A stretch of 64,000 bases of DNA from Mytilus californianus (lineage: Eukaryota). This document shows, piece after piece, positions 1,318-64,000 of the stretch; within the stretch, counting starts at the first letter, position 1; each line of letters starts with the position of its first letter. The notes under the pieces were generated by a model. The model made no database searches and was not told where the DNA came from. It worked only from the letters and a program-made list of their open reading frames with translations. Where the stretch lies: assembly GCF_021869535.1 (NCBI RefSeq), contig NW_026262690.1, positions 91,822,001-91,886,000 on the forward strand, in the 5' to 3' direction. The position numbers and the translations under genes were made by a program.

Positions 1318-1395
1318 CTGCAAGTACTCTCAGATCGGTGTTTTCTGCAAGTACTCTCAGATCGGTGTTTTCTGCAAGTACTCTCAGATTGGTAT
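1318..1395. repeat. 27-bp tandem repeat, ~3 copies, inside a fragment of an abundant dispersed repeat
   Basis: CTGCAAGTACTCTCAGATCGGTGTTTT starts at 1318, 1345 and 1372. Confidence 0.85.
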
Positions 1396-3849
1396 TTTAT
1401 GTCTAACGTTTTTATAAGTTGTATTTTGTGGTGCGTAGTATCGATCTGATGACTGAAGTCCCTTTCAACTTATATTTAGAGATTATTTAACAACATTGTA
1501 CCATATTAGTGGGAGGGTTATCAAACGTAGGTTAGAGGAGAGTTAACTCACTACAAACGCCACATTCTGTTTGTACCTGACAAAATGTGAAATAATTCAA
1601 AAGTAAAAACCAATAGCCTGATTTGAGGCAAAACAACAAACGAAAAACAAAGATAACAGACAGCAGCCTACGACAACCACTGAATTTCAGGTTCATGACT
1701 TGGAGCCGGCACACATAAAGTGTGGTGGGCTTTAACATTTTGGTGAGCGCTTAATCATCCTCATAACCTTGGATAATGATGTATTAACACAACATAGGAA
1801 CAAACAGTAAACATCAATCGGAAATGGCTTGACTCGTCAGATTGGCACGAAGCACAAACAACAACTAACATAAAGACGAAAGACACAAAGTACCGATTAT
1901 AGAGTACTCCCATTCACTGAAAATGTGTTTAAATATACAATATCAATTTATAAATAAATCTTGTTCCCTAAGACTTTAGTATCAATCAGTGCACACACCT
2001 GCTATTTTCGATTGGGAGATTTACGCCGTAGAAATTTGTTCAGTACGCTGCAAACAGTAAATAAGTGATAATTTTAGATTATCCAACGCAAGTGCTTTTC
2101 CAACTATATTTTTGTCCCGAGAAGTTCCAAAGGATGTTCCAAATAACATATAGGTTTACGATAGCTGATAGTGTACCTTCTTTTCTTGATCTGCTGATGA
2201 AATCTTGTGAACTATGGAACTAATCTGAGGTTTTCTTGCATTGTTACTTCACATTGCTAAATGTACGATAATATATCTGTTTACATGGTTTTCCAAAGCG
2301 ATGCCAAAAGGAATGAATTGATGGTTTATGGAAGGCGAGTCGTAATTTTTTTCTTCTTCTAGTAAACAAATATACTTAGCAAAACGTTAGTGATCTACAC
2401 AAGAAAAAAATACAGGTAAAAGTAATTACAAAATATATCCTTTATTGTTGATAATTGGACGTTTTTACTTCAAATTATTATTGGGTATATTTCACGATTA
2501 TGAAGTATGTAGCTAAAATAATTACGTGATAATAAGCGCCTTTAATTAATGTTGTGATTCATTTCAATTTGACCATATGATCAGGATAGCAGGTAAAACA
2601 CATAGACAACAATGCTTCACGATCAATACCTGAACAGATGTTGAAAAATGTTATTATTATACCGAGCCATAATTCATTCAGTATTTCTGCTTTCTTTACA
2701 AAATATATAGTACACGTGGAGTATATTAATTATGTTTGTTTGTGTATGATTTTTTACAGTAAAAGTAAAGAATGTGAATTATGTGGTATTGATACAAACA
2801 CAAAATGCTGCATCTTCATATGTGATGTTTAATTCTGGATGTATATAGCTTGTTGGAGATTCATATTACAGTGTTAAAATTGTTGATTTTTGGTTCGATA
2901 GAAAAATGCTTAATGTTGTTTAAAAGGTGAGTGCTTTTGAATTGTAAAATCGATAATCATTTTTGCTATAACAAATTGCTATTGTAGCCGTAACTGGATT
3001 TAAAATACAAAACAAATATAGGTGAGCTAATTGTCTTTTTTTCTTATTTATTTATGACTAATTTTGTTTACTTGTTCTCAGAAACGATTATATGTTTTCA
3101 TAATTATTTGAAATTGAGCAACGAACTTCCTTTTAATGACAATTCAAAATACGCGAAACTTTTGAATTAGTTATGCTGTTGAACTCTTATTTCATTTTGA
3201 CTTTTGACATTTTGTCTTTTCCTTTGCTCACTGATTCGTCAAACTATTGAACAAACATTGTTACAATACGCAGTATCAACTTTGTTACGTAACAGAGAAC
3301 TGTTTTATCTAATTACATTTGCTGACGGCCGTATGACAAACTTTTTCTTGACAAATAGCTTTACCTTGCGACCACGTGTTTTGTCTTACGAGCAACTTTA
3401 AATGTACTGAACGATTATTTTTAAAACCTTACACAGTGAGAAATAAATTTCCATTATACAATAAAATGATTTACACCACAAACAATAACATGTTTATGAC
3501 CTTACAACTAACACTATTGAATCACTTTACTTGCATTTCAACCAATTTCATTACCTTGCGACTAACTTCAAATTCACTAAACCATTGAATACAACATTAC
3601 CTAACGATCAAATATATCACCTTCCTATGTTTGCTTTACTGTTCAACCCAATTAATTAATTTTCTATCTAAAATCGCATTACTTGTGAATGTGGGTTTAA
3701 CTGTGTGTAAAAGGGGTGCATGCTCTTTAAAATAATAATTTGTATCAGATGTCATGTGAAAAATTAGTTCCCATCCATTAGAAATTAGGAAAAAAATAAA
3801 TACAACATTGACTTGATCTATATGTTATTGACACTTTTTTAACGACAAT

Positions 3850-8076: not shown

Positions 8077-9697
8077 GTAAACACTTTCTAGAGTGAGAGG
8101 TAAAGTAAACACTTTCTGAATTGAGAGGTAAAGTAAACACTTTCTAGAGTGAGAGCTTAAGAAAACACTTTCTAGAGTGAGAGGTAAAGAAAACACTTTC
8201 TGGGTGAGAGGTTAAGAAAACATTTTCTAGAGGGAGAGGTGAAGAATACACTTTCTAGAGTAAGAGGTAAAGACGACACTTTCTGGAGTGTGAGGTAAAG
8301 AAAACAAGTTTTGGAGTGAGAGGTAGAGACAACACTTTTCGAAAAGGGAGGTCAAGAAAACATTTTCTGGAGTGAGATGTAATTATAAAGTGAACACTTC
8401 TGGAGTTTGAGGTATAGACAACACTTCTGGACTGTGAGGTAAAGACAACACTTCTGGAGTGAGAAGTTAAGACAACACTTTCTGGAGTGAGAAGTAGAGA
8501 AAACACTTTCTTGAGTGAGAGGTAAAGACAACACTTTTTGGTGTTAGAGATAAAGAAAACACTTTCTGTATTGAGAGATAAAGAAAAGATTTCCTGGAGT
8601 GAGAGTAAAGTAAACACTTTTGGAGTGAGAGGTTAAAACAACCCTTTTCCGAAGTGAGAGTAATGAAGACACTTTCTAGAGTGAGAGGTAAAATAAACAC
8701 TTTCTAAATTGAGAGGTTACGTAAACACTTTCTGAATTGAGAGGTAAAGTAAACACTTTAGAATTGAGAGGTAAAGTAAATACTTTCTGAATTGAGAGGT
8801 AAAGAAAACACATTCTGAATTGAGAGGTTAAGACAACACTTTCTGAATTGAGAGGTTAAGACAACACTTTCTGAATTGAGAGGTTAAGACAACACTTTCT
8901 GGGGGTGAGAGGTAAAGTAAACACTCTCTGGAGTGAGAGTAAAGAAAATTCTTTCTAAAGTGAGAGGTAAAGTAAACACTTTCTAGAGTGAGATCTTAAG
9001 AAAACACTTTCTAGAGTGAAAGGTAAAGAAAACACTTTTCGAAAAGGGAGGTCAAGAAAACATTTTCTTGAGTGAGAGGTAATTATAAAGTGAACACTTC
9101 TGGAGTTTGAGGTATAGACAACACTTCTGGACTGTGAGGTATAGACAACACTTCTGGAGTGAGAAGTTAAGACAACACTTTCTGGACTCAGAAGTAAAGA
9201 AAACACTTTCTTGAGTGAGAGGTAAAGACAAAACGTTTTGGTTTGAGAAGTAGAGACAACACTTTTTGGTGTTAGAGGTAAAGAAAACACTTTCTTGAGT
9301 GAGAGATAAAGAAAAGATTTCCTAGAGTGAGAGTAAAGTAACTTCTGGAGTGAGAGGTTAAGACAACCCTTTTCCGAAGTGAGAGTAATGAAGACACTTT
9401 CTGGAGTGAGAGGTAAAGGTAACACTTTTTAGAGTGAAAAGTAAAGACAACACTTTCTGGTGTAAGGGGTAAAGAAAACACTTTCTGGTATGAGAGGTAA
9501 AGACAACACTTTCTGGAATGAGAGGTAAAGAAAACACTTACTGGTGTAAGAGGTAAAGAAAACACTATCTGGAGTGAGAGGTAAAGAAAACACTTTCTGG
9601 TGTAAGAGGTAAAGACAACACTTTCTGGAGTGAGAGGTAAAGACAACACTTTCTGGAATGAGAACTAAAGAAAACACTTTCTTGAGTGAGAGGTTAA
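8077..9697. repeat. 28-bp minisatellite (GAGGTAAAGA(C/A)AACACTTTCTGGAGTGA), ~55-58 units
   Basis: 28-bp periodicity read directly, e.g. line 9601; explains the spurious - strand ORFs at 7957-9710. Confidence 0.9.
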
Positions 9698-41300: not shown

Positions 41301-42010
41301 TGCGTTATCCCTAAACTTCATGTCCCGCTAAGAAAGTGCTGGCCTTTCAATGAGTTATTCAAAATTGTTTCGTGACTTTATTGATCCCATTTATCCTATT
41401 GAAATGAGGGGATAACAAAGATACAGTAAGTTTGTTTTTCCTTTCAGGACTTCCTTGATGGAAGGTTTTTGCTGATACGGAAACTACTGAACTAAGAATT
41501 ATTGATAGTTAAGTTATTCATATCATATATTTTACGGATGTCTTCATGACTTGGTTGACCTTCACAATAAATCTTTGTCACAGAGACAACCAAGGAACTA
41601 GGTTTTTTGTTTATTGTTTTGTTCATAAATCTGGCCCATGGATTTATCCTTTGAATTGTTTTACATTTTGTCATGTCGGGACCTTTTATAGCTTGTGATG
41701 CGGTGTGGGTTTTGCTCATTGTTGAGGGCCGTACGGTGACCTGTAGTTGCTAACATCTATCATTTTGGATTCTGGCGGATAGTTGTCTCCACATCTTATT
41801 GTTTTATGTATATGTATATATATATATTGCGAAAGCAAATTTTACAGATCTAACATTGTTGGGCTGATGTTTAGACGAGTTGTATATATATATATATATA
41901 TATTCGGGTTTATATGATCCGTTCATCCTATTTCGACTCTTTCAAAATTCAAGAGTCTATCCTAAATTGAGGTAAATTATATGGCCTTCCAAATACCGTT
42001 TCGATTCCTA

Positions 42011-42054
42011 ACATCACTGAAGAGACATTAATTGTCGAAATCCGGATATGGTGT
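42011..42054 (+). ncRNA. Type I hammerhead ribozyme, intact core
   Basis: ACATCA-CTGAAGA-GACA TTAAT TGTC-GAAA-TCCGGA-TA|TGGTGT; predicted cleavage after 42048. Confidence 0.85.
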
Positions 42055-42523
42055 ACAAATTTTTGCACCTCATGTTTGCGGTATACCATCTTTTCCGCAA
42101 GTTTATTGTTTTCTGTTTGGTAATAAATTATTATAAGATCCATTTCGTTACATCTGGTGATCCGTTTATTTGGCAATCGCCATGGCAGTCAGCAGGGTTT
42201 AAGAACATCCGTTGTTCGACCTGTTAGTCAAATGCGTTTTGTTAAAATATACTTTTTCACTTTTTTGGTCTTTTGGAAAATGTTGTTTGTGCTGTATTTA
42301 GACCCCTCTACCAAGACATTTGTTTCGCATGCACACGTATAAAAATTGTGGTTTTTATCCAACGCAATCATAGGTTTGAACGTTGTTTTCAATTTAGACT
42401 TGTTTATATTTTTTCGTTTGGGCTTGTATTATATTTGCCTTCGGGTTTATATCTTCAAAATTCAAGAGTCAATCCCAAATTGAGGTAAATTATATGGCCT
42501 TCCAAATACCGTTTCGATTCCTA

Positions 42524-42567
42524 ACATCACTGAAGAGACATTAATTGTCGAAATCCGGATATGGTGT
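42524..42567 (+). ncRNA. Type I hammerhead ribozyme, intact core
   Basis: Same motif 513 nt downstream; predicted cleavage after 42561. Confidence 0.85.
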
Positions 42568-43288
42568 ACAAATTTTTGCACCTCATGTTTGCGGTATACC
42601 ATCTATTCCGCAAGTTTTTTGTTTTCTATTTGGTATTAGATTAAAATTTAGATCCATTTTGTTACATCTGTGATCCGTTTATTTGGCAATCGCCATGGCA
42701 GTCAGCAGGGTTTAAGAACATCCGTTGTTCGACCTGCAAGTCAAATGCGTTTTGTTAAAATATACTTTTTCACTTTTTGGTCTTTTGGAAAATGTTGTTA
42801 GTGCTGTATTTAGACCTACCAAGAAATTTGTTTGCATGCACACGTATAAAAATTGCGGTTTTTATCCAACGCAATCATAGGTTTGAACGTTGTTTTCAAT
42901 TTAGACTTGTATATATATATATATTTGGTATTAGATTAAAATTTAGATCCATTTTGTTACATCGATATATTTACAAATTTAGATCGTCCAGTGCTGTTTA
43001 TTTGGAATTCTTATTGACGCAATCGTTCTTGTAACATCATAACTGTCGTCACCGTTAAAGCTTTAGAATTGTGCTAGTTCATATCGCACATTATTATTTT
43101 TATTTAAAGCATATATTTGAACTCTCTGCTGTAATTAGTCATATAACCTATGTCGTGTTTAACACATATTTAGAATTGTGCAAGCGTCTTACCTGATGTT
43201 CGGTTTGACTTTTTTATTGTATAAATTTCAAGATTGTTATAGTTTAATTTAAGTAGACTGATATATGATTCATTCAACATCACAATCA

Positions 43289-55058: not shown

Positions 55059-55184
55059 ACAATAGCCATGGAATTTTGCAAAAAGAATGTAAAGATATCA
55101 CAAACAGAGTCCCTGTATTAGAAACAGTTTACCCTTGATGGTTACAGAAATGTGTCTGTGCAATGTGAGGAAGGAGGATGGACT
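55059..55184 (+). CDS. FReP exon 5, start of fibrinogen-related domain, carrying an apparent +1 frameshift
   Basis: NSHGILQKECKDITNRVPVLETV in one frame and TLDGYRNVSVQCEEGGWT|GTAAGT in another; the first frame stops at TGA 55136, the second has TAG at 55119. Confidence 0.75.
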
Positions 55185-55574
55185 GTAAGTATATTAGAAT
55201 GGCTTGTAGGTGTAAAAGAAAAATCGTTTGAAACCATGTTGCTACTTTTTCCTTTTTCTATTCATTGTTGTCATTATTGCTTTATTTCATTATTGATATT
55301 AGTAGTTTAAGTAGTAGTAATGGTGGTAATAGAGATTCACAATAACTGTATGACACCGACCGGACTCCGAATACAAACAAGAATAAAACTGGAAAAATAC
55401 GGGGCTATCTCAAAATTCTAAAGCATTATAGGCTTCTATACATAAATGCCTCCTAGGTGTTCCCATGACTTTTTTTTTGTAGTATTTAAGATCACTAAAT
55501 ACATGTTCAACGGAAACTAGATATTTTGTTATAAGTCTTTGAGTTTTATGTTTTACTAACTGAAGTATAACTTT

Positions 55575-58611: not shown

Positions 58612-58708
58612 GTTATTCAAAAACGGTATGATGGTAGTGTTGAATTCCACAGAAATTGGAATGATTATGAAAACGGATTTGGAAACATACATGAGGAGTT
58701 TTGGTTAG
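58612..58708 (+). CDS. FReP exon 6 (VIQKRYDGSVEFHRNWNDYENGFGNIHEEFWLG)
   Basis: Canonical fibrinogen C-domain motif GGWT|VIQxRxDGSxxFxRxWxxYxxGFGxxxxEFWLG; AG/GTAAG splice sites; remaining exons lie beyond the window. Confidence 0.95.
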
Positions 58709-59189
58709 GTAAGACAAATATGATCTTAATATATCAATTTCATTTTTTTTCTGATTTAGATTAAAATGTTCGTAATACAGCGTTTTACCAGTAAATGCAC
58801 ATCCTTGTTTTAAAGAACTTGTAAGCCAGTCATAACATTTTAATGCAGGCTGTAAAACATAATACACAGAGTTCATCATATTCTGAAAAAATTCTGTGTA
58901 TCAAACATATTGTGTTCTTTCATTCCTTTAGTTTGTGGATAATACTGACCTTTAGTTAAAATATTCGTGATAACATTTCGGTCATCAGCTTCATGGAACA
59001 CACATATTTTTAATATTTATAAAAAAAGAATGCTGTCGTTTATATGTGCTTCGACAAGTTAAACATTCATTAAATAAAGGCAACAGTAGTATATCGCTGT
59101 TCAATAGTCATAAATCGATTAAGCGAAAACAAACCGGGTTACAAACTAAAACGGAGAAAAAACAGAAATTCACTTATACGTATTTACTA

Positions 59190-59995
59190 TGCTTTTATTG
59201 GAGTATGGTGATGTTGTTTGGGGCAATTGCTCTCAGCACGAGTCCTAGCTTCTTGAAAAATATTCAAAGAGAAGCTGCTAGAATTATTACCGGACTACGT
59301 CGTAATTCCTCAAGACAAAAACTGTATATTGAATTAGGATTAGAAACTCTGGAGAATAGACGAAATAAACATTAGCTTCAACTGTTTTATAAAATATTAA
59401 ATGGGATGACCCCTGCATACTTATATGAGTTAGTCCAGCCATATTTTCCCAGACAAGCCCCTTATACTTTGAGGAATGAAAATAATACATTTCATCCCCC
59501 ACTTTCTAGAACTAGCTTTTACTTATATAGTTTCATATTTTCCATCATAACACTTTGGAATGGTTTTTCTCTAAGTATACAAAAAACCCCAAGTTTATGT
59601 ATATTTAGGGTGGACTAGACAAATTTTATAGGACTGATGAAATATTTGAACCTTTCAACTATGGGATAAGGAAACATAATATTAGTTAGTCATTGCTGAC
59701 TTAGAAACAATGCTTGCAACTTAAAAATCTCATTTGTTTGATTAATTCTTATCAGAGAACACTATTTGTTCAAACTGTAATAATCCTGTTGAGGATAACC
59801 AGCTTTTTTTTATTTGCCCTAAGAACAATGATATAAGACAGATCTTACTTGATTCCATTTATTCAATTATTGATAATGTTGACATAAATTTTGATATATT
59901 ACTTTTTGTAAACAGATTATTTTCGTACGATATTAATATTAATATATTTAAATCTGTTCAGAAGTATATCAGTGACACTAACCGTATTGTTTGAA
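59190..59995 (+). mobile_element. 5'-truncated, decayed LINE (CR1/L2-like RT C-terminus) in FReP intron
   Basis: LLEYGDVVWGNCS, IQREAARIITG, LENRRNKH*LQLFYKILNGMTPAYL, Cys-knuckle remnant CSNCNNPVED..FFICP, terminal FKSVQKYISDTNR; contains stops and frameshifts. Confidence 0.85.
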
Positions 59996-60480
59996 ATTTA
60001 TTTTTGAAATTTTGTTTTATTTAGTGTTTATGTTTCTTTTCGTTTCTTTTTGGTTTTTTTTTCAACATTGATTCATTTGATAAGCTTAGTGTCTCTTCCA
60101 AACCTTATATATATATATATATATATATACAAGTCTAAATTGAAAACAACGTTCAAATCTATGATTGCGTTGGATAAAAACCGCAATTTTTATACGTGTG
60201 CATGCAAAACAAATTTCTTGTTAGAGGGGTCTAAATACAGCACAAACAACATTTTCCAAAAGACCAAAAGAGTGAAAAAGTATATTTTAACAAAACGCAT
60301 TTGACTAACAGGTCGAACAACAAATGTTCTTAAACCCTGCTGACTGCCATTGGCGATTGCCAAATAAACGGATCACCGATGTAATAAATGGATCTTAAAT
60401 ATAAATTTAATACTAAACAGAAAACAATAAACTTGCGGAAAAGATGTTATACCGCAAACAAAAGGTGCAAAGGTTTTTGT

Positions 60481-60524
60481 ACACCATATCCGGATTTCGA
60501 CAATTAATGTCTCTTCAGTGATGT
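60481..60524 (-). ncRNA. Type I hammerhead ribozyme, array unit 1 (also intact at 61020-61063, 61559-61602, 62637-62680, 63176-63219)
   Basis: - strand ACATCA-CTGAAGA-GACA TTAAT TGTC-GAAA-TCCGGA-TA|TGGTGT; predicted cleavage between 60487 and 60486. Confidence 0.85.
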
Positions 60525-62097
60525 TAGGAATCGAAACGGTATTTGGAAAGCCATACAATTTACCTCAATTTAGGATAGACTCTTGAATTTTAAGGAGTCA
60601 AAATAGGATGAACGGATCATATAAACCCGAAGGCAAATATAATACAAGCCCAAACGAAAAAATATAAACAAGTCTAAATTGAAAACAACGTTCAAACCTA
60701 TGATTGCGTTGGATAAAAACCGCAATTTTTATACGTGTGCATGCAAAACAAATATCTTGTTAGAGGGGTCTAAATACAGCACAAACAACATTTTCCCAAA
60801 GACCAAAAGAGTGGAAAAGTATATTTTAACAAAACGCATTTGACTAACAGGTCGAACAACAAATGTTCTTAAACCCTGCTGACTGCCATTGGCGATTGCC
60901 AAATAAACGGATCACCGATGTAATAAATGGATCTTAAATATAAATTTAATACTAAACAGAAAACAATAAACTTGCGGAAAAGATTTTATACCGCAAACAA
61001 AAGGTGCAAAGGTTTTTGTACACCATATCCGGATTTCGACAATTAATGTCTCTTCAGTGATGTTAGGAATCGAAACGGTATTTGGAAAGCCATACAATTT
61101 ACCTCAATTTAGGATAGACTCTTGAATTTTAAGGAGTCAAAATAGGATGAACGGATCATATAAACCCGAAGGCAAATATAATACAAGCCCAAACGAAAAA
61201 ATATAAACAAGTCTAAATTGAAAACAACGTTCAAACCTTTGATTGCGTTGGATAAAAACCGCAATTTTTATACGTGTGCATGCAAAACAAATTTCTTGTT
61301 AGAGGGGTCTAAATACAGCACAAACAACATTTTCAAAAAGACCAAAAGAGTGGAAAAGTATATTTTAACAAAACGCATTTGACTAACAGGTCGAACAACA
61401 AATGTTCTTAAACCCTGCTGACTGCCATTGGCGATTCCCAAATAAACGGATCACCGATGTAATAAATGGATCTTAAATATAAATTTAATACTAAACAGAA
61501 AACAATAAACTTGCGGAAAAGATGTTATACCGCAAACAAAAGGTGCAAAGGTTTTTGTACACCATATCCGGATTTCGACAATTAATGTCTCTTCAGTGAT
61601 GTTAGGAATCGAAACGGTATTTGGAAAGCCATACTATTTACCTCAATTGAGAATAGACTCTTGAATTTTAAGGAGTCAAAATAGAATGAACGGATCATAT
61701 AAACCCGAAGGCAAATATAATACAAGCCCAAACGCAAAAATATAAACAAGTCTAAATTGAAAACAACGTTCAAACCTATGATTGCGTTGGATAAAAACTG
61801 CAATTTTTATACGTGTGCATGCAAAACAAATTTCTTGTTAGAGGGGTCTAAATACAGCACAAACAACATTTTCCAAAAGACCAAAAGAGTGAAAAAGTAT
61901 ATTTTAACAAAACGCATTTGACTAACAGGTCGAACAACAAATGTTCTTAAACCCTGCTGACTGCCATTGGCGATTGCCAAATAAACGGATCACCGATGTA
62001 ATAAATGGATCTTAAATATAAATTTAATACTGAACAGAAAACAATAAACTTGCGGAAAAGATGTAATATCGCAAACAAAAGGTGCAAAGGTTTTTGT

Positions 62098-62141
62098 AAA
62101 CCATATCCGGATTTTGACAATTAATGTCTCTTCAGTGATGT
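62098..62141 (-). ncRNA. Hammerhead with G12A core mutation, unit 4 (same in unit 7, 63715-63758)
   Basis: + strand ATTTTGAC instead of ATTTCGAC, so the - strand reads AAAA instead of GAAA. Confidence 0.8.
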
Positions 62142-64000
62142 TAGGAATCGAAACGGTATTTGGAAAGCCATACAATTTACCCCAATTTAGGATAGACTCT
62201 TGAATTTTAAGGAGTCAAAATAGGATGAACGGATCATATAAACCCGAAGGCAAATATAATACAAGCCCAAACGAAAAAATATAAACAAGTCTAAATTGAA
62301 AACAACGTTCAAACCTATGATTGCGTTGGATAAAAACCGCAATTTTTATACGTGTGCATGCAAAACAAATTTCTTGTTAGAGGGGTCTAAATACAGCACA
62401 AACAACATTTTCCAAAAGACCAAAAGAGTGAAAAAGTATATTTTAACAAAACGCATTTGACTAACAGGTCGAACAACAAATGTTCTTAAACCCTGCTGAC
62501 TGCCATTGGCGATTGCCAAATAAACGGATCACCGATGTAATAAATGGATCTTAAATATAAATTTAATACTAAACAGAAAACAATAAACTTGCGGAAAAGA
62601 TGTTATACCGCAAACAAAAGGTGCAAAGGTTTTTGTACACCATATCCGGATTTCGACAATTAATGTCTCTTCAGTGATGTTAGGAATCGAAACGGTATTT
62701 GGAAAGCCATACAATTTACCTCAATTTAGGATAGACTCTTGAATTTTAAGGAGTCAAAATAGGATGAACGGATCATATAAACCCGAAGGCAAATATAATA
62801 CAAGCCCAAACGAAAAAATATAAACAAGTCTAAATTGAAAACAACGTTCAAACCTATGATTGCGTTGGATAAAAACTGCAATTTTTATACGTGTGCATGC
62901 AAAACAAATTTCTTGTTAGAGGGGTCTAAATACAGCACAAACAACATTTTCCAAAAGACCAAAAGAGTGAAAAAGTATATTTTAACAAAACGCATTTGAC
63001 TAACAGGTCGAACAACAAATGTTCTTAAACCCTGCTGACTGCCATTGGCGATTGCCAAATAAACGGATCACCGATGTAATAAATGGATCTTAAATATAAA
63101 TTTAATACTAAACAGAAAACAATAAACTTGCGGAAAAGATGTTATACCGCAAACAAAAGGTGCAAAGGTTTTTGTACACCATATCCGGATTTCGACAATT
63201 AATGTCTCTTCAGTGATGTTAGGAATCGAAACGGTATTTGGAAAGCCATACAATTTACCTCAATTTAGGATAGACTCTTGAATTTTAAGGAGTCAAAATA
63301 GGATGAACGGATCATATAAACCCGAAGGCAAATATAATACAAGCCCAAACGAAAAAATATATACAAGTCTAAATTGAAAACAACGTTCAAACCTATGATT
63401 GCGTTGATTAAAAACCGCAATTTTTATACGTGTGCATGCAAAACAAATTTCTTGTTAGAGGGGTCTAAATACAGCACAAACAACATTTTCAAAAAGACCA
63501 AAAGAGTGAAAAAGTATATTTTAACAAAACGCATTTGACTAACAGGTCGAACAACAAATGTTCTTAAACCCTGCTGACTGCCATTGGCGATTGCCAAATA
63601 AACGGATCACCGATGTAATAAATGGATCTTAAATATAAATTTAATACTAAACAGAAAACAATAAACTTGCGGAAAAGATGTAATATCGCAAACAAAAGGT
63701 GCAAAGGTTTTTGTAAACCATATCCGGATTTTGACAATTAATGTCTCTTCAGTGATGTTAGGAATCGAAACGGTATTTGGAAAGCCATACAATTTACCTC
63801 AATTTAGGATAGACTCTTGAATTTTAAGGAGTCAAAATAGGATGAACGGATCATATAAACCCGAAGGCAAATATAATACAAGCCCAAACGAAAAAATATA
63901 TACAAGTCTAAATTGAAAACAACGTTCAAACCTATGATTGAGTTGGATAAAAACCGCAATTTTTATACGTGTGCATGCAAAACAAATTTCTTGTTAGAGG

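What the first reader, a model, noticed from the sequence alone, without database searches (positions are those of the whole stretch)
60130..64000. Apparent 539-bp satellite is an array of self-cleaving hammerhead ribozymes (retrozyme-like)
Seen: exact 539-bp period. Each unit's - strand has stem I ACAUCA/UGGUGU, core CUGAAGA, stem II GACA/UGUC, GAAA, stem III, and an AUA cleavage triplet. A possible distal extension of stem I (AUACCG/CGGUAU) is also present. Established: tandem genomic repeats with one type I hammerhead per unit define non-LTR retrozymes, which yield monomeric linear and circular RNAs and encode no protein. Inference: a - strand transcript would be cut into 539-nt monomers. 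This is longer than the roughly 170-400 nt I recall for described animal retrozymes, so it may be an undescribed family.
Basis: partly seen in the sequence, partly recalled or inferred. Interest (0 to 1): 0.9.

Follow-up and report, generated by a model that had tools for sequence, protein, structure and literature searches.

The report
Mussel 539-nt hammerhead retrozyme array
This is one 14-unit copy of a very abundant non-coding jumping element of a Mytilus-type mussel genome; each 539-base repeat carries a hammerhead self-cutting RNA motif, so it is a new family of a known class (animal retrozymes), and its insertion scars show how it is probably copied.

Summary
From 60130 to the window end the period is exactly 539 bp, and the array runs on outside the window to 14.3 units. 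Each unit has a complete type I hammerhead (HHR) on the minus strand. Five of the seven in the window are intact; two carry G12-to-A plus a stem I mismatch.

The HHR is a relative of the Mytilus retrozyme HHR that was shown to cut (Cervera and de la Pena 2020). Six of 14 base pairs differ by compensatory changes and the core is invariant.

The genome holds about 10,000 exact copies of the HHR core and at least 2,226 insertions. All of these end at the same nucleotide next to (TA)n. Their 5' ends vary, and many are longer than one unit. Some lie tail-to-tail with Penelope-like elements (RT plus GIY-YIG).

This is the signature of target-primed reverse transcription of a multimeric or circular RNA. 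Local duplication followed in this array.

Not shown: cleavage or 539-nt circles in vivo. RNA-seq reads are sparse and run into flanks, and none pile up at the cut site. At 539 nt the unit is within the published range of 51-972 bp.

Verdict: a new family of a known kind. Earlier notes of this scan reached the same reading on other windows of this genome.

The parts
60130..64000 (-). Tandem array of 539-bp retrozyme units. There are 7.2 units in the window. The array continues to G000:C110:91889858, which would be window coordinate 67858, for 14.3 units in all.
60106..60129 (.). (TA)12 microsatellite that abuts the element's fixed 3' end (RNA sense ...AGACUUG). The far end of the array, outside the window, abuts (AT)8.
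60130..60147 (-). 3'-terminal 18-mer of the element (RNA sense GTTTTCAATTTAGACTTG). Inside the array the same motif is followed by TTTATAT, the likely priming site.
60481..60526 (-). Type I hammerhead with an intact core. The predicted cut is 3' of A17, which is window position 60487 on the minus strand.
61020..61065 (-). Type I hammerhead, intact (cut after 61026).
61559..61604 (-). Type I hammerhead, intact (cut after 61565).
62098..62143 (-). Hammerhead with G12 changed to A and stem I G1.5 changed to U. It is probably inactive. The variant is private to this array.
62637..62682 (-). Type I hammerhead, intact (cut after 62643).
63176..63221 (-). Type I hammerhead, intact (cut after 63182).
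63715..63760 (-). Hammerhead with G12 changed to A and stem I G1.5 changed to U. It is probably inactive.
41903..42909 (+). A second, older insertion of the same family: about two units of a 513-bp variant, 90% identical, with a 23-bp deletion. Intact HHRs lie at 42009-42054 and 42522-42567. It is flanked by (TA)10 at 41883-41902 and (TA)7 at 42910-42923, and it has the same 3' end.
58612..58761 (+). Exon-like open frame of a fibrinogen-related (Fibrinogen_C) gene. The next piece of the domain lies beyond the array, so the array sits in an intron, antisense to the gene.

Best explanation
The region is one insertion of a non-autonomous, non-coding retroelement of the non-LTR retrozyme class, in a Mytilus-type mussel genome.

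Shown here:
- A 14.3-unit head-to-tail array of 539-bp units lies inside a (TA)n microsatellite, in an intron of a fibrinogen-related gene.
- The hammerhead sense is antisense to that gene.
- Genome-wide, insertions of this family share one exact 3' end, have variable 5' ends, are often longer than one unit, and sit in (TA)n.
- This array later grew or was homogenised in place, because a double-mutant hammerhead found nowhere else occupies 4 of its 14 units.

Inferred:
- Minus-strand transcripts fold a type I hammerhead that cuts after the A of AUA.
- Stem III is 2 bp plus a self-complementary CCGG loop, so two hammerheads of a multimeric transcript can pair into a double hammerhead.
- By analogy with the proven mussel family, unit-length RNAs with 5'-OH and 2',3'-cyclic phosphate ends would be closed into circles by a tRNA ligase.
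- A Penelope-like element's RT and GIY-YIG endonuclease nicks (TA)n. The nicked DNA anneals to the UUUAUAU that follows AGACUUG in the RNA. Reverse transcription then runs along a multimer or round a circle, giving tandem copies that stop at variable 5' points.
For: Repeat and motif:
- The period is exactly 539 bp with 14 HHRs.
- The 35-nt HHR core occurs 9 times in the window against 0 expected.
- The full 45-position Rfam Hammerhead_1 model aligns at 22.4 bits, E 0.0014. The proven Mg353-type HHR of this genome also falls below the cut-off, at 32.5 against 34 bits.

Selection on the fold:
- I aligned the HHR with a sister family and with Mg353-type HHRs. 96.8% of cells pair, against 12-48% when partners are slid.
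- 6 of 14 pairs show changes on both sides, including stem III and the palindromic loop (GCGC against CCGG). All core bases are invariant.
- Mg353 cuts in vitro and forms circles in mussel tissues (PMC7229834).

Class features: 33% GC, no ORF above 84 codons, no LTR.

Mobility:
- 9,999 exact HHR cores and 16,725 exact 3' 18-mers.
- 2,226 exact junctions of that 18-mer with (TA)5 or more; the control pattern gave 0.
- In 30 such loci every copy ends at the same base. 5' ends fall at unit positions 66-512, lengths run from 55 nt to over 1.5 kb, and about 16 of 28 have (TA)n on the 5' side too. Inverted and tandem neighbours are common.
- Copies on many chromosomes are 97-100% identical.

Partner:
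- ORFs with RVT_1, a Cys-rich linker and GIY-YIG lie beside retrozyme copies.
- 5 of 30 random retrozyme 3' junctions face a PLE 3' tail across the same (TA)n.
- 38 of 734 copies of one PLE tail do so genome-wide.
- PLEs are reported to prefer (TA)n (PMC8557442).

Dimer: cofold energy is -26.7 against 2 x -9.1 kcal/mol, with an 8-bp intermolecular stem III.

Local growth: the G12A plus G1.5U variant has 3 exact hits in the genome, all in this array.
Against: - No direct evidence of cleavage or circles. In three raw RNA-seq runs only 75-110 reads per million lie on the unit. Depth follows genomic copy number. 27-68% of reads run on into unlike flanks or (TA)n. Both orientations occur. No ends pile up at 62643. 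These are oligo-dT or cDNA libraries, which are poor at catching circles.
- The 539-nt RNA folds no better than shuffles (z -0.05 and -0.16). The Mg353-type unit gives z -2.36.
- The active monomer fold (-3.1 kcal/mol) loses to an alternative fold that sequesters GAAA and stem III. The context MFE is -24.0, against -14.7 when the HHR is enforced.
- 5' ends of insertions are not enriched at the cleavage site: 33 against 26 at a control site. Cleaved linear monomers are therefore not the usual template.
- The unit shares no blastn similarity with the neighbouring PLE UTRs.
- No proper null was computed for the co-location with PLE tails.
Confidence: 0.85

Rival explanations
1. The element is a retroposed, SINE-like repeat whose hammerhead plays no part in mobility. 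Linear read-through or multimeric transcripts, not circles, are copied by a PLE or LINE enzyme. The ribozyme is a hitch-hiker or has another role.
For: - The fixed 3' end lies 164 nt upstream of the next cleavage site and 375 nt downstream of the previous one, not at a cleavage site.
- 5' ends are not enriched at the cleavage site.
- RNA reads mostly look like passive co-transcription.
- The RNA is not rod-like.
- A 441-bp tandem family with a similar tail (TTTAGACGAGTTG followed by (TA)n; 1,386 copies) uses the same targets.
Against: - The HHR fold has been kept by compensatory changes across three families. The 46-nt HHR has no difference between subfamilies that are 90% alike.
- Multi-unit insertions need a template longer than one unit, or a circle.
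- The related Mg353 family does form circles.
Confidence: 0.25
2. It is an ordinary satellite DNA, possibly derived from a Penelope-like element's terminal repeat. It spread and grew by DNA-level processes (unequal crossing-over, extrachromosomal circles), and its hammerhead is a fossil.
For: - The array shows satellite-like dynamics. Variants are shared by non-adjacent units, and a private dead-HHR variant occupies 4 units.
- A preprint derives vertebrate retrozymes from PLE terminal repeats and invokes unequal crossover for array growth.
Against: - At least 2,226 dispersed insertions share one exact 3' end, have variable 5' truncation and target (TA)n. This is not what DNA-level spread gives.
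- About 10,000 HHR cores are exact.
- There is no sequence similarity to the PLE UTRs found beside the copies.
Confidence: 0.08
3. The hammerhead-like motif is a chance match in an AT-rich repeat.
For: The Rfam score of 22.4 bits is below the gathering score of 34. The motif was not reported in the whole-window or 5-kb searches.
Against: - All 11 core positions, the three stems and the cleavage triplet are present.
- The proven mussel HHR also scores below the cut-off.
- There is covariation with that HHR.
- No match is expected in shuffles.
Confidence: 0.01

Closest known systems
Mytilus galloprovincialis non-LTR retrozyme (Mg353; HHR A/B; Cervera and de la Pena 2020, PMC7229834)
   Same: - Same host lineage: about 4,800 copies of the Mg353 HHR are in this genome.
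- Tandem, AT-rich, non-coding units with one type I HHR each.
- The same HHR layout: 6-bp stem I, 4-bp stem II, and a 2-bp stem III with a palindromic tetraloop.
- The HHRs can be aligned, with compensatory changes.
- Mg353 copies also show a fixed 3' end and 5' truncation.
   Different: - Unit length is 539 bp, against 350-390 bp.
- The unit body is unrelated in sequence. The HHR differs at 15 of 46 positions.
- The cleavage triplet is AUA, against GUC.
- Exact HHR cores are about twice as many.
- The target is (TA)n, whereas the two Mg353 copies I looked at have no (TA)n flanks.
- The RNA is not more structured than shuffles (z about 0, against -2.4).
- Cleavage and circles have not been tested.
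Amphibian satellite 2 and axolotl retrozymes (type I HHR acting as dimers)
   Same: Tandem units of a few hundred bp. A weak stem III is closed by a palindromic tetraloop that allows a double hammerhead. The dimer is predicted to be favoured here too.
   Different: There is no sequence relation and the phylum differs. Stem III has 2 bp here, the invertebrate type, which the 2020 paper found to cut as a single motif.
Penelope-like elements with terminal hammerheads (Neptune, Penelope, Poseidon; Arkhipova 2006, Craig et al. 2021, PMC8557442)
   Same: - (TA)n insertion bias, tandem and inverted insertion complexes, and 5' truncation.
- PLE copies with RT, a Cys-rich linker and GIY-YIG lie tail-to-tail with this retrozyme.
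   Different: The retrozyme encodes nothing. Its HHR is a full type I motif, unlike the minimal HHR in the PLE 3' UTRs seen here. It shares no blastn similarity with those UTRs.
LINE-SINE pairs that share a 3' tail (stringent-type partners)
   Same: It is a non-autonomous element with a precise 3' end that the partner's RT would recognise or prime on. Tails of the retrozyme (TTTAGACTTG), of a 441-bp family (TTTAGACGAGTTG) and of one PLE (CTCTAGACT) look alike and all abut (TA)n.
   Different: The tail likeness is short and was not tested statistically. The template appears to be multimeric or circular. There is no poly(A), and no Pol III promoter has been shown.
Plant LTR retrozymes (type III HHR, Gypsy-mobilised)
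   Same: Non-coding, ribozyme-delimited RNA that is thought to circularise and be reverse-transcribed.
   Different: Plant retrozymes have LTRs, PBS and PPT, type III HHRs and high GC, and they occur as single units. None of these is present here.

Membership tests
Non-LTR (metazoan) retrozyme, as defined by Cervera and de la Pena 2020 | [quoted passage not shown] | tested here: met
   There are 14.3 units of exactly 539 bp. Other loci range from fragments to more than 17 units.
Non-LTR (metazoan) retrozyme, as defined by Cervera and de la Pena 2020 | One type I hammerhead per unit with the conserved core (CUGANGA, GAAA, UH) and three stems | tested here: met
   Five of 7 in the window are intact (10 of 14 in the array). 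Covariation with the proven mussel HHR is shown.
Non-LTR (metazoan) retrozyme, as defined by Cervera and de la Pena 2020 | Low GC (below 45-50%), no LTR, PBS or PPT, and no coding capacity | tested here: met
   GC is 33%. The longest open frame is 84 codons. The array ends directly in (TA)n.
Non-LTR (metazoan) retrozyme, as defined by Cervera and de la Pena 2020 | Expressed as unit-length linear and circular RNA | tested here: inconclusive
   Reads are present in 3 raw RNA runs and in contigs of 2 RNA libraries. They are sparse, occur in both orientations, run into flanks, and show no ends at the cut site. The libraries are poly(A)-selected or cDNA.
Non-LTR (metazoan) retrozyme, as defined by Cervera and de la Pena 2020 | Self-cleavage of the HHR in vitro | not testable with these tools
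   The evidence is indirect only: an intact core, covariation, and a favourable dimer fold.
Non-LTR (metazoan) retrozyme, as defined by Cervera and de la Pena 2020 | Highly self-paired monomer RNA | tested here: not met
   z is -0.05 for the 539-nt unit and -0.16 for the 513-nt variant. The Mg353-type unit gives -2.36.
Rfam RF00163 Hammerhead_1 | Score at or above the gathering cut-off of 34 bits | tested here: not met
   The score is 22.4 bits over the full model, positions 1-45. For calibration, the experimentally active Mg353-type HHR scores 32.5, also below the cut-off.
Element mobilised by target-primed reverse transcription (non-LTR or PLE type) | Constant 3' end, variable 5' truncation, and dispersed copies with unrelated flanks | tested here: met
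   There are 2,226 exact 3' junctions. In all 30 loci examined the 5' ends are variable and the flanks unrelated.
Derivative of a Penelope-like element's terminal repeat (Li, Clavereau and Pollet 2026 preprint) | Sequence similarity between the retrozyme unit and a PLE terminal or UTR region | tested here: not met
   blastn of the unit against two PLE loci of this genome finds only the adjacent retrozyme pieces. Only two PLE families were examined.
Classical satellite DNA | Spread and homogenisation by DNA-level recombination only | tested here: not met
   Local duplication is seen. The dispersal pattern, however, is that of retroposition.

The most novel reading that the evidence does not exclude
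This family would give the first sequence-level picture of how animal retrozymes integrate. A Neptune-like Penelope element nicks (TA)n. The nicked microsatellite primes on one internal UA-rich site of a circular or multimeric ribozyme RNA. Rolling reverse transcription lays down tandem units. The second strand of the same target can prime on the PLE's own RNA, which would give the tail-to-tail PLE-retrozyme chimeras. A shared short tail motif (TAGAC...) would then be the recognition signal common to the PLE, the retrozyme and a 441-bp tandem family.
Probability: 0.35. Interest if true: 0.7.

Novelty: new member of a known kind. Interest (0 to 1): 0.45.

Why it matters
Animal retrozymes are known to make abundant ribozyme-bearing circular RNAs. 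Who copies them back into DNA, and how, is still a hypothesis; the 2020 paper says only that PLEs are a 'strong candidate'.

This family is large and young enough to read the mechanism from its scars:
- one exact 3' end in thousands of insertions;
- a single target, (TA)n;
- multi-unit products;
- physical chimeras with RT plus GIY-YIG elements.

That makes the partner and the priming site directly testable. It also shows that repeats annotated as mussel 'satellites' can be retroposed ribozyme arrays, and that the Rfam cut-off misses both this hammerhead and the proven mussel one.

Tried and rejected
- **Rfam at gathering threshold.** The whole window, and five related loci, gave nothing. The HHR appears only when about 120 nt are searched. 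A blank at the threshold therefore says little.
- **RNA evidence.** I used one run search and one lay of reads. The sequence is in RNA libraries of three organism labels. There is no sign of cleavage ends, unit-length RNA or strand preference, so this neither supports nor refutes self-cleavage.
- **HHR-cleaved linear monomers as the template.** (TA)n directly joined to the cleavage-site 5' end occurs 33 times, against 26 at a control site. There is no enrichment, so I dropped the idea.
- **An abundant autonomous element with the same terminal hexamer.** GACTTG followed by (TA)n, excluding this family, occurs 43 times against 14 for the control. No such element exists.
- **A mis-typed variant junction** gave no match. 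The corrected pattern led to a sister HHR family, not to a PLE.
- **Similarity between the unit and PLE UTRs:** none.
- **Phage collection:** no match.
- **Literature:** no paper holds the 20-nt HHR string. Dfam and Repbase were not available.
- **Distal stem I extension:** present, but without covariation and energetically minor.
- **Co-location with PLE tails.** I did not compute a proper null for the 38 of 734, so it counts as suggestive only.
Full report
**1. What is in the sequence**

From 60130 to the end of the window the DNA is a head-to-tail array with a period of exactly 539 bp. TRF missed it because its longest period is 500.

The window lies at G000:C110:91822001-91886000 in a 1.65-Gb assembly. 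With loci fetched from that assembly I followed the array beyond the window. It has 14 predicted cleavage sites, 13 intervals of exactly 539 bp, and 7,729 bp in all. One end abuts (TA)12 at 60106-60129. The other end, outside the window, abuts (AT)8.

GC is 33% and the plus strand is A-rich. No open frame exceeds 84 codons.

The array lies between two pieces of a Fibrinogen_C domain encoded on the plus strand. These are window 58612-58761 (profile positions 45-86, E 9e-14) and L003 2454-2912 (positions 74-148, E 2e-17). The array therefore sits in an intron, with the hammerhead sense antisense to the host gene.

**2. The hammerhead**

Each unit carries the following on the minus strand:
- stem I, ACAUCA;
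- core, CUGAAGA;
- stem II, GACA-UUAAU-UGUC;
- GAAA;
- stem III, A-U and U-A closed by CCGG;
- the triplet AUA;
- the stem I partner, UGGUGU.

The 35-nt core occurs seven times in the array and twice more at 42017 and 42530, against none expected.

Rfam's Hammerhead_1 aligns over its whole length at 22.4 bits (cut-off 34), and only when about 120 nt are searched. This shortfall is not informative. The HHR type that Cervera and de la Pena showed to cut in vitro is present in this genome and scores 32.5 bits, also under the cut-off. It too is missed at the gathering threshold.

Two of the seven in-window motifs (62098-62143 and 63715-63760) have G12 changed to A and a broken stem I pair. In the whole array four of 14 do. 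G12 is a catalytic base of the hammerhead (established knowledge), so these units would probably not cut.

**3. Is the fold under selection?**

The genome holds about 4,800 copies of the published Mytilus Mg353 hammerhead. This identifies the host as a Mytilus-type mussel.

The genome also holds a sister family, with 350-bp spacing, stem III loop GCGC and triplet AUC. I aligned 11 hammerheads of the three families, which fit without gaps. On the hammerhead structure:
- 96.8% of cells pair, against 12-48% when partners are slid;
- six of 14 pairs change on both sides;
- the changed pairs include two in stem I, two in stem II, one in stem III, and the pair that keeps the stem III loop self-complementary;
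- all core bases are invariant.

These changes lie on few branches, so they are few events. Even so, they touch every stem.

The 513-bp variant in the window is 90% identical to the array consensus and has no difference in the 46-nt hammerhead. An even longer clean stretch covers the element's 3' end region. With two sequences this is only suggestive.

**4. Energetics**

- An alternative fold pairs the GAAA and stem III strand with an upstream UUUCG-containing segment. The context MFE is -24.0, against -14.7 with the hammerhead enforced.
- Two hammerhead strands cofold into a double hammerhead with an 8-bp stem III, at -26.7 against 2 x -9.1 kcal/mol.
- The whole 539-nt RNA is no more stable than shuffles (z -0.05; the 513-nt variant gives -0.16). 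The Mg353-type unit gives z -2.36.

In this respect the family does not fit the 'highly self-paired' description of retrozyme RNAs.

**5. How the family spread**

Exact-match counts in the genome are:

| Sequence | Count |
|---|---|
| 35-nt hammerhead core | 9,999 |
| Element's 3'-terminal 18-mer | 16,725 |
| 18-mer followed directly by (TA)5 or more | 2,226 (control 0) |

I examined 30 of these junction loci.
- Every copy ends at the same base (...AGACTTG).
- What follows the (TA)n is unrelated DNA, an inverted copy, or a fresh truncated copy. It is never the in-register unit.
- The 5' ends fall at unit positions 66 to 512.
- Lengths run from 55 nt to more than 1.5 kb.
- About 16 of 28 have (TA)n on the 5' side as well.

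Arrays on many chromosomes are 97-100% identical to the query, while the sampled junction loci are 84-98% identical. Activity has therefore been long and recent.

A constant 3' end with variable 5' truncation is the classical mark of target-primed reverse transcription. The 3' end is not the hammerhead cleavage site. Inside arrays the terminal motif is followed by TTTATAT, so annealing of nicked (TA)n DNA to that site is the simplest priming model (inference).

Insertions longer than one unit need a multimeric or circular template. (TA)n joined directly to the cleavage-site 5' end is no commoner than at a control site (33 against 26). Cleaved linear monomers are therefore not the usual template.

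**6. The likely partner**

Open frames with RVT_1 and GIY-YIG lie next to retrozyme copies in 5 of 42 sampled loci. One is a 641-codon frame with RT, a Cys-rich linker before the endonuclease, and GIY-YIG. It is present as a 99.9% inverted duplicate. Arkhipova describes a linker of this kind for Neptune and Nematis; this classification is my reading, not a test.

The 3' UTRs of these elements run into (TA)n and meet retrozyme 3' ends tail-to-tail.
- Five of the 30 random retrozyme junctions face such a tail. They belong to three PLE families.
- Genome-wide, 38 of 734 exact copies of one PLE tail are tail-to-tail with the retrozyme tail within 8-38 nt.

PLEs are reported to prefer (TA)n and to form tandem and inverted complexes (PMC8557442). 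I computed no null for the co-location, and the unit has no blastn similarity to these UTRs. The partner is therefore indicated, not shown.

**7. Local history**

Non-adjacent units share variants. The G12A plus G1.5U hammerhead occurs in four units of this array, and its exact 40-mer occurs nowhere else in the genome. The array has therefore also grown or been homogenised in place, like a satellite.

**8. RNA**

Runs of three organism labels hold the sequence. I laid a 539-nt unit (62374-62912) against three raw RNA runs.
- 75-110 reads per million lie on it, in both orientations.
- Depth is highest over the part present in most genomic copies.
- 27-68% of reads continue into unlike sequence or (TA)n.
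- No ends pile up at 62643.

The libraries are oligo-dT or cDNA. Contigs of a random-primed library also hold the sequence but cannot show level or ends. Transcription of copies is therefore seen. Self-cleavage and circles are neither supported nor refuted.

**9. Comparison and novelty**

The element meets the structural definition of a non-LTR retrozyme, and its hammerhead is homologous to the proven mussel one. Its unit, cleavage triplet, target and abundance differ from the published Mytilus family.

I found no paper holding its hammerhead string. Size is not a novelty, since 51-972 bp is reported in a 2026 preprint. It is a new family of a known kind.

Earlier notes of this scan on other windows of the same genome describe the same family and the same Penelope-type reading. 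They are not independent evidence. I re-derived the points used here.

Noticed in passing
window 41826-41882 (+); L101, L102: This is a 5'-truncated piece of another repeat whose tail, TTTAGACGAGTTG, abuts (TA)n. Genome-wide there are 1,386 copies of that tail, often in tandem at about 441-bp spacing. The tail resembles the retrozyme's TTTAGACTTG. L101, searched whole, gave no Rfam match at gathering threshold.
   Followed up: partly
L046, L055, L056 (G000 loci); loose ends at window 62650/62651: A sister hammerhead family with about 350-bp spacing. It has the same core and stem II, stem III loop GCGC, triplet AUC and stem I GCAUCA/UGGUGC. At least 139 copies lie within 2 mismatches of a poor consensus. 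It is transcribed in the RNA runs.
   Followed up: partly
L043 1171-1945; L044 1486-1581: Copies of the published Mg353-type retrozyme also share a fixed 3' end (...CTATGATGAGTTTATTT) and have 5' truncation. They have no (TA)n flanks, which suggests a different target or partner.
   Followed up: no
L096 4364-4400 (-); L017 about 1395-1440 (+): A minimal hammerhead-like motif (CUGACGA, a 5-bp stem II, GAAAU) lies in or near PLE 3' UTRs. In L096 it runs straight into the (UA)n, so its stem III and cut site would lie in the microsatellite. In L017 the core is mutated to CUGCAGA.
   Followed up: no
L096 1-4129: Two copies of a Penelope-like element (RT, Cys-rich linker, GIY-YIG), inverted and 99.9% identical. 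One has an uninterrupted 641-codon frame. Each 3' end lies in (TA)n and faces a retrozyme piece.
   Followed up: partly
window 55122-55307, 58612-58761 (+); L003 2454-2912 (+): A fibrinogen-related (FReD) gene on the plus strand hosts the array in an intron. A 2026 preprint reports that retrozymes are excluded from introns in Xenopus.
   Followed up: partly
window 42925-42965: After the (TA)7 that ends the 513-bp locus, about 40 nt repeat an internal piece of that element (42631-42668). This is a further tiny truncated copy in the same microsatellite.
   Followed up: no
window 8079-9694: A 28-bp minisatellite with about 58 copies, 78% matches.
   Followed up: no
window 59376-59991 (+): Open frames resembling the C-terminal part of a non-LTR retrotransposon protein (FYKILNG...YL motif) lie just upstream of the array. 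There is no Pfam match.
   Followed up: partly
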